Notes: generated by a model from the letters alone, not told the origin. Shown: positions 34,003 to 46,816, counted from the first letter of the whole stretch. The stretch is 63,475 bases of DNA, filler included, from Octopus bimaculoides (GCF_001194135.2; 5 parts of 4 records of this genome joined end to end with filler, not necessarily neighbours in it); one strand, 5' to 3'. Made by a program: numbers and translations.

Positions 34003-34074
34003 AGAGTCCTTAAACTGGGAAGATTTTGAAAAGATCCAACTTCTAATTCATCTATTGCATTTCTATACAACTCT
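34003..34074 (-). CDS. LRR exon, type A (ELYRNAIDELEVGSFQNLPSLRTL)
   Basis: 72 nt; acceptor tttttgttacAG, donor GTaagttg; phase 2-2; typical 24-aa LRR consensus xLxxNxIxxLxxxxFxxLxxLxxL. Confidence 0.9.
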
Positions 34075-35004
34075 CTGTAACAAAAATGTGAATCGTGAAC
34101 AAACGTATAGAGGTTCGTAATGTATATACAAATATAATGCCTCAAAAATTAGGAAAGTATACGGCGATGATAACGGAGTAGACGATGATGATCATGATTC
34201 CATTGGTTGTGGTGGTGTTGGTGGTGATGTTTGTGATGGTGGTGATGGTATGACAATTTGGAGGGCGAGGACGGTTTTAATTTAGTGTTCAAGTTGATCA
34301 GGATGCTAGGTGGTGGTAGTGATGATGATGAAGAAGATGATGATGATAGTGATGATGATGGTGTTTGTGGGGGTGGTGTTTAAGATAATGATGTCGATGA
34401 GGAAGGCTATGGTAATGATGATTTTGATGATGGCGATGGTGAAGCAATTATGTAGCTGGAAATATTTTCACAGAAATAAAGAAAGTAAATCGTTAAAAGT
34501 TGGAAGGTTAGATATATTTATATATGAGTAAAGTTGCTTTAACTATACAATTAGAAGATTGAGGGGCGACATTCATCGTTCATCTAAAGGCGGTAAATGT
34601 ACAGACTTCAATACAAGTTGATACACTAGTATTAAACAAGCCATAACCAAACCATAAACACATATATATATATACACATACATGAAATGTGCTGCTTCAG
34701 CAATCCCACACGCTTATGTACTAACACGCACATACATAAAGACTCCCTAAAACACACAAGCATACTCACATCGACGAACATTCAAAATCGTTCACTTACA
34801 GCTGTGGAGGTGGTTTGAGGATGTAGATAGAGACAAAGATAAAGAGCGCAATAGAATGGGGTGGCAATTAAAAATTATAAATACGACGGCAATGAAATAC
34901 TATCAAGAATGATCCAAATCACTATTCTGTTAAACTAGAAAATTTCTGGAAAATTCTTCCTTCAATTTTCTAGATAGCATTGTCATACAATATGCTTACT
35001 GTCA

Positions 35005-35284
35005 TCCCAAATATAATGCAGTTTTTATACTACTTAATTTTCATAAATAGTATAAACAAAGTTCTCTTCTAATCTAAAATATACTCTCCTTCATTTTCTA
35101 CAATGCTCTTCCATCTATCTGGCAGACCTCTGAGGCCCCTATCCGAAACTTCACTTGTCCGCAACGAAAAATACTCCTCCAGTACTGTTCTGATCTCCAC
35201 TAAAAAATTCAAATTTTTTTCCCATTCAAATGATTTCGACGAGTGCAGAATAACTGATAATCAGATGTGCGAAATATACATCCA
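35005..35284 (-). mobile_element. mariner 3' remnant (paralog of 42094-42370)
   Basis: gtcatcccaaatataatgc TIR-like end and a decayed transposase C-terminus aligning to 42100-42360. Confidence 0.65.
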
Positions 35285-36009
35285 NNNNNNNNNNNNNNNN
35301 NNNNNNNNNNNNNNNNNNNNNNNNNNNNNNNNNNNNNNNNNNNNNNNNNNNNNNNNNNNNNNNNNNNNNNNNNNNNNNNNNNNNNNNNNNNNNNNNNNNN
35401 NNNNNNNNNNNNNNNNNNNNNNNNNNNNNNNNNNNNNNNNNNNNNNNNNNNNNNNNNNNNNNNNNNNNNNNNNNNNNNNNNNNNNNNNNNNNNNNNNNNN
35501 NNNNNNNNNNNNNNNNNNNNNNNNNNNNNNNNNNNNNNNNNNNNNNNNNNNNNNNNNNNNNNNNNNNNNNNNNNNNNNNNNNNNNNNNNNNNNNNNNNNN
35601 NNNNNNNNNNNNNNNNNNNNNNNNNNNNNNNNNNNNNNNNNNNNNNNNNNNNNNNNNNNNNNNNNNNNNNNNNNNNNNNNNNNNNNNNNNNNNNNNNNNN
35701 NNNNNNNNNNNNNNNNNNNNNNNNNNNNNNNNNNNNNNNNNNNNNNNNNNNNNNNNNNNNNNNNNNNNNNNNNNNNNNNNNNNNNNNNNNNNNNNNNNNN
35801 NNNNNNNNNNNNNNNNNNNNNNNNNNNNNNNNNNNNNNNNNNNNNNNNNNNNNNNNNNNNNNNNNNNNNNNNNNNNTGCTGATGATGGGATGATGTTAAA
35901 TTTGATCATTGTAAAGTGGATGAGAATTCGCAGGTTTTGTTGTGATGAAGTATATGATATTGATGATGATGTTGGCGTTGTAGATTGTGCATGTGTAAAA
36001 GAATAAGAT

Positions 36010-36120
36010 TAAGAAGAAGAAGTAGAAGAAGAAGAAGAAAATGAAGAAGAAGAAGAAGAAGAAGAAGAAGAAGAAGAAGAAGAAGAAGAAGAAGAAGAAG
36101 AAGAAGAAGAAGAAGAAGAA
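36010..36120. repeat. (GAA)n microsatellite
   Basis: Directly visible; paralogous tract at 38340-38499. Confidence 0.95.
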
Positions 36121-36455
36121 AACAAAAACAACAACATGTAAAGAATTTGTTTAATTAGAACGGAGAGCCATGAATGGTAAACAGCGTTGATCGAGAAGTA
36201 AACATACGAAATAATATACAAAAGGATACACAAGTGAAGTCGTAAACTCGTGTACGTTCACTCATACTGAAAGACAGACTTATGTACATATATACAAAGA
36301 TTATGATAAATGATATACAATAGGACATACAAGCACAAGTCGTACACTCGGGTACATTCAGTGATACTGCAAGACACAGACTTACATATGCGCATACATA
36401 GTCCAAATCATATGCATTAATTATCAGAAACTCATGCATAGACTCAGAAACTGAG

Positions 36456-36486
<31 letters not shown>

Positions 36487-36645
36487 TTTCCGAGGTATTC
36501 ACAAAGAATAAATAGTCCAGTGGAAAGCGACTGAGTGTATATGGTGCGTCAAGAAGAGTGAGAGTAAAAGGAAAGCATGGAAAGACATGAAATGTTTAGA
36601 ATTATATTGTCAATAAGAGAGAATCAAAAATTGAATGCAACTTAC

Positions 36646-36717
36646 AGAGATTCTAAACTGGGAAGATCTTGAAACGATCCAACTTCTAATTCACTGATAG
36701 CATTATTATGCAAAGTT
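36646..36717 (-). CDS. LRR exon, type A (TLHNNAISELEVGSFQDLPSLESL)
   Basis: 72 nt, tttttgttacAG / GTaagttg, open frame, phase 2-2. Confidence 0.9.
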
Positions 36718-44350: not shown

Positions 44351-44439
44351 AAAATAGAAATTGCGTCTATGCAAAGACGTTACAGATTTAGACAGATATC
44401 GTCAAAGAAATACGATAAACGTAGGTTGATTCAACTTAC

Positions 44440-44511
44440 AGAGTTGTTAAACTGGAAAGATTTCGGAAGGTTTCTGCTTTGATTTTCTTAATTTCATTTC
44501 GGTGCAATTTC
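44440..44511 (-). CDS. LRR exon, type B (KLHRNEIKKIKAETFRNLSSLTTL)
   Basis: 72 nt, ttatgttccAG / GTaagttg, open frame, phase 2-2. Confidence 0.9.
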
Positions 44512-44744
44512 CTGGAACATAACATTGAGTAAAGAACATTTATTGAACAAATTTGTGTCTAAAGAATTGGATGATGGAAGAGATGAAAAATAGATTACCA
44601 TCAAGATGAACTTCATGATAATGTTGGGTTGAATGAGGGCAGTATTGTGCGTGATGATAGGGGAGAAGAGAATAAATAATTGTGGGAGTGGTGATGATGA
44701 TGTTAACAATATCGATGGGGTTTAGCAAAGAAGTAGCCTTATAT

Positions 44745-45236
44745 AAAAGTAGAAAGGAGGAGGAGCTAGTCGCTATGTAAGACGAGGATATTTGTAATGG
44801 CATTGCAATCGACGAGCTAGCAGCGAGAATGACTTTCGACAAATTCTCCAATGCGAAACATGAAGGTTGCATTGTCACAGCTAAGGCGCACGCTCTGAGA
44901 AGCGAGAGGACCGAATCTGTTCATTGGGCCCGCATGGTGGAGAGGCAGAGTGGTAACAAAGCAACAATTTCGTCTATGATGAACGAAGACGGACATGAGC
45001 TAAGTGATTGCAGGCAGACGTGTGAGGCCTTCCACCAGCACTATGCTCAGTGGTTCGATGGGAGTATTGGGTCAGAGACGGTAGAGGTTTTCTGTCCGAA
45101 CCTCGACGGCATGCCACCCCTCTCCACGGCCAACGTTGAGCGCTGCGAAAGGCAGATAACATCGGCCGAAATACATAAAGCCCTTGTGGGCTGCACGAGG
45201 CGCAAATTACTCGGTTTGGATGGTCTGTGCTACTAG
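44745..45236 (+). mobile_element. Tx1/L1-like ORF2 internal fragment (endonuclease-RT linker)
   Basis: CERQITSAEIHKALVGCTRRKLLGLDGLCY resembles ITxxEIxxAL...KSPGxDGLPYE at the start of L1/Tx1 RT. Confidence 0.65.
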
Positions 45237-45473
45237 ATTTATGTAAATATAATCATATGCATTATCAAATCTCATACGCTGATACTCTCTCACACACACG
45301 CACAAACACACACACACACGCACAAACACACACATGCGCACGCACACACCTTGTCAGACATTCAAAAAGAATTGAATATTCCTGTGGAAAGCGAGTAAGT
45401 ATATACAATGCGTCAAGGAGAGTGAGTTAAAAGAGAAAGCATGGAAAGACATTAAATGTTTAGAATTATGTTA

Positions 45474-46706
45474 CATTTGGAGCGGATGAGGACAGCAGTC
45501 GACAAACTGTTGCGTAAAGAACAAGCCGGATTTAGGAAAAACCGTTCATGTGTAGATCAAATTGCCACTCTTGACATCATCTTAGAGCAAAGCGCAGATG
45601 GGAATGCACCGCTTCATATTAATTTTATAGATTTCGAAAAAGCATTCGATAGTGTAGATTGGGAAGGCTTATGGAGAATTATGCAGCACAACGGCATACC
45701 AGACAAGTATATATCTATAATAAGAGTAACTTACCAAGGAATGTCATGCAGAGTCTTGATTGGAAACGGAGCTACGGATAAATTCGAAGTAAAAATGCGA
45801 GTTCGACAAGGCTGTATACTTTTTCCCTTTTTATTTCTACTAGTTATAGATGGGATTATGAAGGAAACTACGATTGAAAGCCAAACAGGCATTGAATGGA
45901 CAGATGCAGAAGCCCTAGAAGATCTCAACTTTGTAGATGATATAGCACTATTTTCACAAATGCAAAATAAAACGTCAAAATTAGAAGCAATAGCTGCCAA
46001 ACGAGGATTGAAAGTCAACCGCGACAAATCAAAAATGATGCGCGTTAATGAAGAAAACATTTAGCGTATTAAAGTAGAAACCGGTGAAGTAGAGGATGTA
46101 GCCGAGTTTACGTATTTAGGTAGTAAGATAACGTTCTCAGGCGGCACCGACGAAGATATTAAGACGAGAATAAGTAAGGCAAGGACCGCTTTTCACCCGT
46201 TAAAAAAAGGATGGAACGCAAGTGAAATTTCAATAAATAACAAAACAAGAATTTTTAACACTAACGTAAAAGCGGTGTTATTGTATGGGGCTGAGACATG
46301 GTGCACAACAGTTAAGTCAAATAAGCAAATACAATCATTCATCAACAGATGCTTGCGTAATATACTTAAAATCAGATGGCCCGAACACATAAGCAATATG
46401 GAGCTCTGGTAAAAGAACGAATCAAGTTCCGATTAGAGAGCAAATATTTAAGAAAAGTGGAAGTGGATTGGTAGCACAATTAGAAAGGACACACCAAATG
46501 TAGCGAAAAGTGCTTTACAGTGGAATCCGGATGGATATAGAAAGAGGGGTAGGCCTAAGAACTCGTGGCGTAGATCAACACAAAGGGAACTAGAGAAAGG
46601 GGGACATTCACGGAAGAGTATAAGTACAGAAGTGAAAAATTATGCGACATGGAATTCAATTATAAGTGGGCTATATTCCGCGTTGGAGGGTTAAAGGCAA
46701 GAAAGG
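45474..46706 (+). mobile_element. 5'-truncated RTE-clade LINE with reverse transcriptase
   Basis: EQAGFRKNRSCVDQI...FIDFEKAFDSV...VRQGCILFPFLF...LNFVDDIAL...LLYGAETW...WNPDGYRKRGRPKNSWRR; candidate TSD ATGTTA at 45468-45473 and 46707-46712; interrupts the conserved intron sequence. Confidence 0.9.
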
Positions 46707-46744
46707 ATGTTAATAATAGAGAATCAAAAACTAATGCAACTTAC

Positions 46745-46816
46745 AGAGTCGTTAAACTGGGAAGAGTTTGAAAAGATCCAACTTCTAATTCATTGATATC
46801 ATTATTATACAACTCT
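46745..46816 (-). CDS. LRR exon, type A (ELYNNDINELEVGSFQTLPSLTTL)
   Basis: 72 nt, ttttttttgttacAG / GTaagttg, open frame, phase 2-2. Confidence 0.9.

What the first reader, a model, noticed from the sequence alone, without database searches (positions are those of the whole stretch)
34003..46816. Hidden LRR gene built from a tandemly amplified, in-frame 72-nt exon cassette array
Seen in sequence: six minus-strand exons (46745-46816, 44440-44511, 41019-41090, 37996-38067, 36646-36717, 34003-34074). Each is exactly 72 nt, stop-free, with AG/GTAAGT sites and phase 2-2, and encodes one typical 24-aa LRR. Their introns are mutually homologous, so the array arose by local exon-plus-intron duplication. 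The ORF track misses all six. Established: one-LRR-per-72-nt-exon architecture is typical of LGR/RXFP/GRL101-type receptors and other extracellular LRR proteins. Inference: symmetric exons allow any skipping or copy-number change without frameshift, so this could be a lineage-specific diversifying receptor (immune or chemosensory) with a modular ectodomain. The gene's identity and termini are not visible here.
Basis: partly seen in the sequence, partly recalled or inferred. Interest (0 to 1): 0.85.

Follow-up and report, generated by a model that had tools for sequence, protein, structure and literature searches.

The report
Unannotated octopus LRR gene exon array
The region holds part of a real-looking, unannotated octopus-type gene for a leucine-rich-repeat protein, built from at least seven 72-base exons that each encode one repeat; this gene layout is already known, so it is a solid but fairly ordinary find.

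Summary
The list is incomplete. A seventh intact exon lies at 41991-42062. A decayed copy with an in-frame TAG lies at 34923-34994. An eighth exon is predicted inside the 592-N gap. The 10-N gap is a false gap, because its two sides share 29 identical bases, so the sequence there is continuous. Both gaps lie in introns, so neither affects the reading frame.

The exons fall into three sequence types (A, B, C). What was amplified is a roughly 6-7 kb A-B-C block, later rearranged, not a single exon. Any exon-to-exon join gives a Leu codon, and reading through any donor gives Leu-stop.

The closest annotated relatives are two Octopus sinensis "LRRC4-like" genes (46-51% identity). One of them (L001) has the same exon architecture, and its NCBI isoforms differ by exactly one 24-aa LRR exon.

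The gene class (secreted, single-pass or 7TM) cannot be seen in this piece. The idea of a diversifying receptor remains speculative. One LRR per exon is already known from Slit genes, human NLR genes and brown-alga ROCO genes, and (from memory) LGR genes.

The parts
46745..46816 (-). LRR exon A1 (ELYNNDINELEVGSFQTLPSLTT)
   Evidence: 72 nt, ttgttacag|...|gtaagttg, phase 2-2, HMM 47.5 bits.
44440..44511 (-). LRR exon B1 (KLHRNEIKKIKAETFRNLSSLTT), with an N-glycosylation sequon NLS
   Evidence: 72 nt, atgttccag|...|gtaagttg, HMM 41.7 bits.
41991..42062 (-). Its donor GTAATT is weaker than the others. Carries sequon NFS.
   Evidence: 72 nt, cattttgcag|...|gtaatttg, same phase, HMM 45.2 bits.
41019..41090 (-). 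LRR exon A2 (ELYNNAINELEVGSFQNLHSLKT)
   Evidence: 91.7% identical to A1.
37996..38067 (-). LRR exon B2 (ELYSNKIAKIKAKTFRNLSSLTT)
   Evidence: 84.7% identical to B1. The exon with its flanks, 37905-38269, is 82% identical to 44349-44700.
37405..37472 (.). False assembly gap. N10 (37434-37443) is flanked by the same 29-mer on each side, so the intron between B2 and A3 is continuous.
   Evidence: CCATGTCGTGCACATATTGTTGTGATGCA ends the left side and starts the right side.
37088..37301 (-). Remnant of a B-to-C intron joined directly to the upstream flank of an A exon. About 1 kb that includes the C exon is missing in this unit.
   Evidence: 37088-37301 matches 42467-42679 (77%). 36303-37092 matches 40684-41422 (73%). 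Nothing here corresponds to 41423-42466.
36646..36717 (-). LRR exon A3 (TLHNNAISELEVGSFQDLPSLES)
35285..35876 (-). True assembly gap in the intron after A3. A B-type exon is predicted inside it (inference).
   Evidence: 35877-36154 aligns with 38180-38511, the 5' flank of B2. The alignment runs into the gap about 110 nt before the point where the exon would start. 35269 and below aligns with the intron upstream of C1.
34923..34994 (-). Decayed C-type copy (pseudoexon). AG and GT are kept and it is 72 nt, but it has an in-frame TAG and has lost its polypyrimidine tract.
   Evidence: 61/72 identical to C1; translation ILYDNAI*KIEGRIFQKFSSLTE. HMM 19.5 bits.
34003..34074 (-). LRR exon A4 (ELYRNAIDELEVGSFQNLPSLRT), the last LRR exon seen in the piece
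   Evidence: No LRR match in 28181-34002.
33189..35269 (-). Paralogous block (Cpsi + A4 + introns), duplicated from or with 40249-42362 (C1 + A2 + introns)
   Evidence: 2.2 kb, 78% identity in aligned columns, 23 gap events.
45456..46064 (+). Reverse-transcriptase fragment of a non-LTR retrotransposon inside intron A1-B1. It is intron filler, not part of the gene.
   Evidence: RVT_1, E=6e-23; best relatives are annotated as endonuclease-reverse transcriptases (e.g. SR3), at 63-65% identity.
42347..42631 (-). mariner-type transposase fragment inside intron B1-C1 (intron filler)
   Evidence: Transposase_1, E=1.4e-8.

Best explanation
The piece is an internal segment of a multi-exon gene on the minus strand. 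The gene belongs to an octopus family of extracellular-type, typical (24-residue) leucine-rich-repeat proteins.

Each LRR is one 72-nt exon bounded by phase-2 introns. Splicing the exons end to end would build a continuous LRR solenoid of at least 7 repeats, probably 8 or more.

The array grew by tandem duplication of a block of three exons (types A, B, C) together with their introns. It was then remodelled. One unit lost its C exon in a roughly 1-kb deletion. Another C copy decayed into a pseudoexon. Transposons inflated some introns.

Every exon ends in CT or TT and starts with A or G. Any exon can therefore be joined to any other, and the junction is always the first conserved Leu of the next repeat. 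Failure to splice any donor gives Leu-TAA. Isoforms with different LRR numbers, or truncated secreted forms, are therefore mechanically possible.

Shown: exon anatomy, the LRR match, the duplication map, junction compatibility, and the architecture of one O. sinensis relative (L001). Inferred: that the exons are transcribed and spliced as drawn, an extracellular location, and the hidden exon. The domains at the gene's two ends lie outside the piece, so the gene class is unknown.
For: Exon anatomy. LRR identity: Pfam LRR_8 at 1e-60. The best solved structures by sequence are LGR4 (2e-57), LRRC15, IGFALS, LGR5, LRIG1 and TLR3.

Completeness: there are exactly 7 intact copies and 1 decayed copy, with zero hits in shuffles.

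Conservation:
- All eight structural positions (L1, L3, N6, I8, L/I11, F16, L/F19, L22) are conserved in all seven exons. Variation sits at solvent-exposed positions.
- pN/pS between exon types is 0.42-0.52.
- All seven exons kept exactly 72 nt, although only 40% of 72-column windows in the paralogous intron alignment are gap-free.
- Both splice sites and the polypyrimidine tract are kept in 7 of 8 copies, and the copy that lost its tract also carries a stop.
- The copies are 73-92% identical, so they are not assembly duplicates.

Block structure and rearrangements. N-glycosylation sequons occur in B1, B2 and C1, and junction codons are always Leu.

Relatives:
- O. sinensis XP_029657302.2 and XP_036369515.1 share 46-51% identity and begin with a signal peptide plus LRRNT.
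- The locus of XP_029657302.2, L001, has five 72-nt LRR exons with the same phase and the same ccag|...TCT|gtaagttg boundaries. The locus of XP_036369515.1 could not be retrieved.
- L001's exon flanks align to the flanks here at 73-78% identity.
- Its isoforms X2 and X3 each lack exactly one of those exons.
Against: There is no transcript evidence for this locus. Neither protein search returned a product of it. The best hits were 46% identity in the word-indexed search and at most 42% among the top 150 of the exhaustive search. That top-150 list is dominated by very long multi-LRR proteins, so a short relative could rank below it.

Within an exon type, exons are only slightly or not at all better conserved than their flanks. 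B1/B2 are 85% identical against 86-88% for their flanks. The A2/A4 exon window ranks only in the top 11% of windows. Within-type pN/pS is 0.3-1.1 on very few sites.

One copy is already dead. No cap domain, signal peptide, TM segment or other exon was found in the 18.8 kb.

The O. sinensis models are themselves truncated and computational.
Confidence: 0.72

Rival explanations
1. The exon array is a combinatorial diversity generator. Regulated skipping, or choice among the A/B/C cassette exons, plus read-through truncation at the built-in Leu-stop, would produce a repertoire of LRR ectodomains with different lengths and surfaces for immune or chemosensory recognition.
For: Every exon pair joins in frame and gives Leu at the junction. 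C1 has a weaker donor, GTAATT. Within type A, differences fall at the beta-strand and adjacent exposed positions, while positions 10-17 do not vary. NCBI isoforms X1, X2 and X3 of the O. sinensis relative differ by exactly one 72-nt LRR exon. Copy number has clearly changed recently. Analogous systems have been proposed for brown-alga ROCO genes (PMC3341825, PMC11378527), and LRR exon skipping has functional effects in NLRP3 (PMC6642158).
Against: No expression or isoform data exist for this locus. The O. sinensis isoforms are Gnomon predictions on a truncated model. The pN/pS values are uninformative. Symmetric LRR exons are also the rule in constitutively spliced genes with a fixed LRR number, such as the LGRs and Slits (the LGR point is from memory). 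No literature on such a cephalopod system was found.
Confidence: 0.15
2. The array is a non-functional relic. The exon-plus-intron duplicates would be drifting neutrally inside a dead or dying gene, and look intact only because the duplications are fairly recent.
For: Exon identity is about the same as flank identity for B1/B2 and C1/Cpsi. Within-type pN/pS reaches 1.1. One copy carries a stop, and one unit has lost its C exon. No protein or transcript of this gene is in the libraries. No terminal exons lie in the piece.
Against: Seven of eight copies keep the ORF, the exact 72-nt length, the AG, the GTAAGT/GTAATT donor and the polypyrimidine tract, although about 22% of flanking bases have changed and indels occur at roughly 0.76 per 72 nt. 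All structural LRR residues are conserved. Between-type pN/pS is 0.42-0.52. A related O. sinensis gene with the same architecture is annotated with isoforms.
Confidence: 0.18
3. The exons are the ectodomain of an LGR/RXFP/GRL101-type LRR-containing GPCR, with its 7TM exon(s) beyond the left edge of the piece.
For: The best solved-structure matches by sequence are LGR4 and LGR5. One LRR per roughly 72-nt exon is the classic LGR and glycoprotein-hormone-receptor gene layout (own knowledge, not tested here).
Against: The LGR4 match reflects generic regular 24-residue LRRs; LRRC15, IGFALS, LRIG1 and TLR3 score similarly. The closest real relatives are short SP+LRRNT+LRR models not named as GPCRs. 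Recent local duplications at 82-92% exon identity would be unusual for LGR orthologues, which (own knowledge) keep a fixed LRR number. No LDLa, hinge or 7TM sequence lies in the 5.8 kb downstream of A4.
Confidence: 0.1
4. The repetition is an assembly artefact, made of collapsed or duplicated haplotigs or mis-joined scaffolds.
For: The piece has five N runs, and one of them is demonstrably a false gap.
Against: Copies differ by 8-27% and carry many indels and different transposon insertions. This is far beyond haplotype divergence. The false gap closes cleanly with a 29-nt overlap.
Confidence: 0.02

Closest known systems
Octopus sinensis 'leucine-rich repeat-containing protein 4-like' genes (XP_029657302.2 with isoforms X1-X3 on contig VCDQ01005429.1; XP_036369515.1)
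   Same: 46-51% protein identity. In the one locus that could be read (L001, XP_029657302.2), each LRR is a 72-nt phase-2 exon with the same acceptor and donor sequences, and the intron flanks are alignable at 73-78%. Decayed LRR exon fragments sit in its introns. Similar exons have been duplicated recently there too.
   Different: This is not the same locus. Outside the exons only dispersed repeats match well. The O. sinensis models show a signal peptide plus LRRNT first exon, which is outside this piece. They are truncated after 4 LRRs at the TAA inside a donor site. In L001 an unannotated fifth exon lies 1 kb further on. The 'LRRC4-like' name is only a best-hit label.
Slit genes and other human LRR families with 'exonic modularity' (Hoss et al. 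2019, PMC6642158, citing Little et al. 2002)
   Same: Short repetitive exons each encoding one LRR module. This makes in-frame alternative splicing possible.
   Different: Slit LRR domains are short blocks of at most about 6 LRRs, each closed by cysteine caps (own knowledge). Here at least 7, probably 8 or more, uncapped LRRs run in series. The exons here are recent local duplicates.
LGR4/5/6, glycoprotein-hormone and relaxin receptors, mollusc GRL101
   Same: Typical 24-residue LRRs. LGR4 is the best PDB match (2e-57). The gene layout is one LRR per roughly 72-nt exon (own knowledge).
   Different: No 7TM, hinge or LDLa domain is visible. LRR number in those receptors is fixed among orthologues, whereas this array shows recent gain, loss and decay of exons.
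Ectocarpus (brown alga) ROCO LRR genes (Zambounis et al. 2012, PMC3341825; PMC11378527)
   Same: Each LRR is a single 72-nt, 24-aa exon. The introns are interspersed with related non-coding (decayed) LRR exons. Exon shuffling or duplication changes LRR number. A role in diversification has been proposed.
   Different: An unrelated lineage. The protein class is intracellular (ROC-COR GTPase) and the LRR register differs. The similarity is convergent architecture, not homology.
Lamprey VLR and arthropod Dscam1
   Same: Diversity arises from arrays of modular cassettes: LRR modules in VLR, tandem duplicated exons in Dscam1.
   Different: VLRs are assembled somatically at the DNA level from incomplete cassettes. 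Dscam1 uses mutually exclusive splicing of Ig half-domains. Neither mechanism is evidenced here.

Membership tests
Typical (24-residue) extracellular LRR proteins (Pfam LRR_8 type) | Tandem LxxLxLxxNxIxxIxxxxFxxLxx repeats of about 24 residues | tested here: met
   LRR_8 at E=1e-60; all structural positions conserved in 7 of 7 repeats.
Typical (24-residue) extracellular LRR proteins (Pfam LRR_8 type) | Signal peptide and cysteine caps (LRRNT/LRRCT) flanking the repeats | tested here: inconclusive
   None found in the piece, but both gene ends lie outside it. The O. sinensis relatives have a signal peptide plus LRRNT.
Octopus 'LRRC4-like' LRR gene family (O. sinensis XP_029657302.2 / XP_036369515.1) | Closest sequence relatives, with shared exon architecture (72 nt, phase 2, ccag|..TCT|gtaagttg) and alignable exon flanks | tested here: met
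   Architecture and flanks could be compared only with L001 (XP_029657302.2). For XP_036369515.1 only the protein is available.
Octopus 'LRRC4-like' LRR gene family (O. sinensis XP_029657302.2 / XP_036369515.1) | First exon encoding MFQQLKLTF... signal peptide plus LRRNT | not testable with these tools
   The piece ends 185 nt upstream of exon A1, and that flank is still homologous to the flanks upstream of the other A exons.
Vertebrate LRRC4 / netrin-G ligand family | LRRNT, 9 LRRs, LRRCT, Ig-C2, TM and PDZ-binding tail; coding sequence in one exon (own knowledge) | tested here: not met
   Here each LRR is a separate exon. Human LRRC4 (3zyi) matches far more weakly (2e-24) than LGR4 (2e-57). 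The Ig and TM parts cannot be tested. The single-exon feature is from memory.
LGR / RXFP / GRL101 LRR-GPCRs | Rhodopsin-type 7TM domain after the LRR ectodomain (plus LDLa modules in RXFP and GRL101) | not testable with these tools
   Nothing of the kind lies in 28181-34002, but the gene may continue beyond the piece.
LGR / RXFP / GRL101 LRR-GPCRs | One LRR per roughly 72-nt exon, with introns in a single phase | tested here: met
   That this is the LGR layout is own knowledge.
Slit | LRR blocks of at most about 6 repeats, each closed by LRRNT/LRRCT, followed by EGF repeats | tested here: not met
   At least 7 consecutive uncapped LRR exons, with no cysteine-cap pattern between them. The Slit domain layout is own knowledge.

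The most novel reading that the evidence does not exclude
Octopods may carry a lineage-specific family of secreted or membrane LRR proteins whose ectodomains are varied after transcription. Any subset of the symmetric 72-nt LRR exons could be joined, always through a Leu codon. Any unspliced donor would end the protein with Leu-stop. Ongoing block duplication, deletion and decay of exons would change the germline cassette set. That would be an LRR-based, splicing-driven analogue of Dscam diversity in a mollusc.
Probability: 0.1. Interest if true: 0.75.

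Novelty: new member of a known kind. Interest (0 to 1): 0.35.

Why it matters
The piece shows that cephalopod annotations miss, or truncate, a family of LRR genes made only of tiny exons. The O. sinensis model on L001 ends at the TAA inside a splice donor although a further exon follows. 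It also gives a clean, datable example of LRR-domain growth by exon-block duplication, with loss and decay caught in progress.

If the exons prove to be alternatively used, it would be an animal example of LRR repertoire variation by splicing. As it stands, it is a well-supported but conventional gene fragment whose function and class are unknown.

Tried and rejected
- **Exhaustive protein search.** It gave 84,176 LRR hits, headed by very long multi-LRR proteins at 27-42% identity. No orthologue could be picked out.
- **Exact-sequence look-ups.** XP_036369515.1 and the window's RT ORF found no contig. The locus could not be extended and the second O. sinensis locus could not be read.
- **Species identification from the RT fragment.** This failed; the best identity was 63-65%. 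The cephalopod origin rests on the O. sinensis best hits and on a 92% match of a dispersed repeat.
- **Structure.** The single-sequence AlphaFold model (pLDDT 77) matched nothing in the PDB at E<=0.001. It is uninformative and was not used.
- **Rfam scan of the piece.** No hits.
- **Further exons.** Searches for LRRNT/LRRCT-like cysteine patterns, and for any further LRR in 28181-34002, found only microsatellite translations.
- **Literature.** No cephalopod LRR cassette-exon system was found, and no open-text source for 72-bp Slit or LGR exons.
- **A C-type exon hidden in the 10-N gap.** Rejected, because the gap is a 29-nt overlap artefact and the flanks show a deletion junction.
- **Selection tests.** Comparing exon with flank identity, and NG86 pN/pS, gave too few sites to separate purifying, neutral and diversifying regimes within an exon type.

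Full report
**1. Observation**

The piece (28181-47001; 37% G+C; N runs at 28776-28885, 31116-31125, 32027-32126, 35285-35876 and 37434-37443) was read directly.

- Each is exactly 72 nt.
- Each is preceded by a T-rich tract ending in CAG and followed by GTAAGT.
- Each is open in only one frame, starting at base 2.

Each exon encodes one repeat of the form L-x-L-x-x-N-x-I-x-x-L/I-x-x-x-x-F-x-x-L-x-x-L-x-x. The spliced peptide matches Pfam LRR_8 at E=1e-60. An HMM built from the repeats and run on all six frames finds these exons at 41-49 bits. The best score in 50 shuffles was 1.4 bits.

**2.

A scan for AG|72 nt|GT open windows and the HMM found two more copies.
- A seventh intact exon lies at 41991-42062(-): TLYNNAIRKIEIGIFQNFSSLTK, boundaries cattttgcag|…|gtaatttg, same phase.
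- A decayed copy lies at 34923-34994(-). It still has AG and GT and is 72 nt long, and it is 61/72 identical to the seventh exon. It carries an in-frame TAG and has lost its polypyrimidine tract.

No LRR-like sequence exists elsewhere in the piece on either strand, including the 5.8 kb downstream of the last exon.

The exons fall into three sequence types:

| Type | Signature | Exons (start coordinate) |
|---|---|---|
| A | …INELEVGSFQNLPSL… | 46745, 41019, 36646, 34003 |
| B | …IKKIKAETFRNLSSLTT | 44440, 37996 |
| C | as the seventh exon above | 41991, decayed copy 34923 |

Identity is 78-92% within type A, 85% within B and about 60-65% between types.

**3. The assembly gaps**

Both gaps lie in introns. 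All exons are symmetric, so the frame does not depend on gap length.

The 10-N gap (37434-37443) is false. The 29 bases before it are identical to the 29 bases after it. This is the signature of two overlapping contig ends, so the intron between B2 and A3 is continuous and hides nothing.

The 592-N gap (35285-35876) shows no such overlap. In gene sense, the sequence leading into it (36154 down to 35877) aligns with the 5' flank of exon B2 (38511 down to about 38180). The alignment breaks off about 110 nt before the point where the exon would begin. The sequence after the gap aligns with the intron upstream of C1. A B-type exon is therefore predicted inside this gap. That is an inference.

**4. 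How the array was built**

Self-comparison shows that intron flanks are homologous within each type, and more faintly across types. Both the old duplications (A versus B versus C) and the recent ones therefore copied exon plus intron.

The order on the minus strand is: A1 B1 C1 | A2 B2 – | A3 [gap: B?] Cψ | A4.

- The largest paralogous block is 33189-35269 against 40249-42362: 2.2 kb, 78% identity and 23 indel events.
- Between B2 and A3, homology jumps at about 37090 from a B-to-C-type intron (matching 42467-42679) straight to the upstream flank of an A exon (matching 40684-41422). Roughly 1 kb that would include a C exon is missing there.
- Some introns are inflated by transposon debris: a non-LTR reverse-transcriptase fragment at 45456-46064(+) and a mariner transposase fragment at 42347-42631(-). 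Long microsatellites add further length.

The amplified unit is therefore a three-exon block of about 6-7 kb that was later rearranged, not a single 72-nt cassette. Copy divergence of 8-27%, with many indels, rules out an assembly or haplotype artefact.

**5. Are the exons under constraint?**

Evidence for constraint:
- All eight structural LRR positions are conserved in all seven exons. Variation sits at exposed positions 2, 4, 5, 7, 9, 18, 20, 23 and 24.
- pN/pS between types is 0.42-0.52.
- All seven exons kept exactly 72 nt, although only 40% of 72-column windows in the paralogous intron alignment are gap-free.
- AG, the donor and the polypyrimidine tract are kept in 7 of 8 copies. The one copy that lost its tract also has a stop, which serves as an internal control for decay.

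Evidence that is weak or points the other way:
- Within a type, exon identity is only modestly above flank identity (A1/A2 92% against 77%; the A2/A4 window ranks in the top 11%) or not above it at all (B1/B2 85% against 86-88%).
- Within-type pN/pS is 0.3-1.1, on about 14 synonymous sites per pair.

The data favour a gene that is, or recently was, functional. They cannot distinguish purifying from diversifying selection on the recent copies.

**6. Splicing arithmetic**

Exons end in CT (TT for C1) and start with A or G. Every conceivable exon-to-exon junction therefore reads CTA, CTG, TTA or TTG, all Leu, which is the first conserved Leu of the next repeat. Any skipping or copy-number change preserves both the frame and the repeat register.

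The base after each exon is the G of GTAA. Reading through any donor therefore gives Leu-TAA, which the sequence shows directly.

B1, B2 and C1 carry N-x-S sequons at the same repeat position. This is consistent with, but does not prove, an extracellular protein.

**7. Relatives**

The word-indexed protein search found as best hit Octopus sinensis XP_036369515.1, named 'LRRC4-like isoform X2': 157 aa, consisting of a signal peptide, LRRNT and 4 LRRs, at 46% identity. Searching with that protein found a second O. sinensis gene, XP_029657302.2 (X1, 157 aa), with isoforms of 133 aa. My peptide is 46-51% identical to it.

The second gene's locus could be fetched (L001, contig VCDQ01005429.1, 36,121 bp).
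- It has a 61-aa first exon encoding the signal peptide and LRRNT.
- It then has LRR exons at 17471, 26535, 31972, 34899 and 36018. Each is 72 nt and phase 2, with ccag|…TCT|gtaagttg boundaries like those here.
- Decayed LRR fragments lie in its introns.
- Isoform X3 lacks exactly exon 26535 and isoform X2 lacks exactly exon 17471.
- The annotated CDS ends at 34974, which is the TAA inside the donor of exon 34899. An intact fifth exon lies 1 kb further on, 32 nt before the contig ends. The model is therefore truncated.

The exon flanks here align to L001 at 73-78% identity, and one dispersed repeat aligns at 92%. This means the same family in the same or a closely related species, but not the same locus.

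The exhaustive search returned only generic LRR proteins at 42% identity or less in its top 150. In the word-indexed search, the only other hits were generic LRR proteins at lower scores. This gene's product was not found in either protein library.

**8. Comparison with what is known**

By sequence, the repeats are generic typical extracellular LRRs. PDB matches run LGR4 (2e-57), LRRC15, IGFALS, LGR5, LRIG1 and TLR3, with LRRC4 itself only at 2e-24. The 'LRRC4-like' name is therefore a label, not a family assignment.

One LRR per short symmetric exon is established:
- 72-nt, 24-aa LRR exons with decayed intronic copies and exon shuffling in Ectocarpus ROCO genes (PMC3341825; PMC11378527).
- That the LGR and glycoprotein-hormone-receptor genes share this layout is my own knowledge and was not tested here.

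No paper describing such a family or mechanism in cephalopods turned up.

**9. Verdict**

The gene class is unknown because both ends lie outside the piece. The diversifying-receptor idea remains a hypothesis. It has one indirect support, the single-exon-skipping isoforms predicted for an O. sinensis relative.

This is a new member of a known kind, of moderate to low interest.

Noticed in passing
window 37405-37472: The 10-N 'gap' is flanked by the same 29-mer (CCATGTCGTGCACATATTGTTGTGATGCA) on both sides. The two contig ends overlap, so the gap is an assembly artefact.
   Followed up: yes
window 45456-46064 (+), possibly with ORF 44829-45236 (+): Reverse-transcriptase fragment of a non-LTR retrotransposon (RVT_1, 6e-23), antisense in intron A1-B1. 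The best protein relatives are annotated as endonuclease-reverse transcriptases (e.g. SR3) and are only 63-65% identical, so it did not identify the species.
   Followed up: partly
window 42347-42631 (-) and 42757-42990 (-): mariner-type transposase remnant in intron B1-C1. Transposase_1 matches the first ORF at 1.4e-8. The second ORF has no Pfam hit.
   Followed up: partly
window 30457-30829; inverted copy 38913-39228; L001 30227-30600: A dispersed repeat that is 92% identical to an O. sinensis contig, with a 69% inverted copy inside intron A2-B2. This is the best nucleotide-level clue that the source is an Octopus or a close relative.
   Followed up: partly
window 32181-33180: A G+C-rich island (49% against 37% overall) with long ORFs on both strands (163 aa and 140 aa) and no Pfam match. 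32639-32782 is 76% identical to L001 22662-22809, so it is probably another repeat family.
   Followed up: partly
L001 34899-34974 and 36018-36089: The NCBI model XP_029657302.2 ends at the TAA inside the GTAAGT donor of its last LRR exon, yet an intact fifth 72-nt LRR exon follows 1 kb downstream, just before the contig end. The annotated 157-aa protein is a truncation.
   Followed up: yes
L001 33566-33613 and 34658-34699: Partial, decayed LRR-exon copies inside introns of the O. sinensis relative. They mirror the pseudoexon at window 34923-34994.
   Followed up: partly
window 38798-38939 and 40354-40465: Inverted trinucleotide-repeat arrays, (ACT)n(ATT)n and (ATT)n(TTG)n, bracket about 1.6 kb of intron A2-B2. 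That stretch has no counterpart in the intron after A3, so it may mark the ends of an insertion.
   Followed up: no
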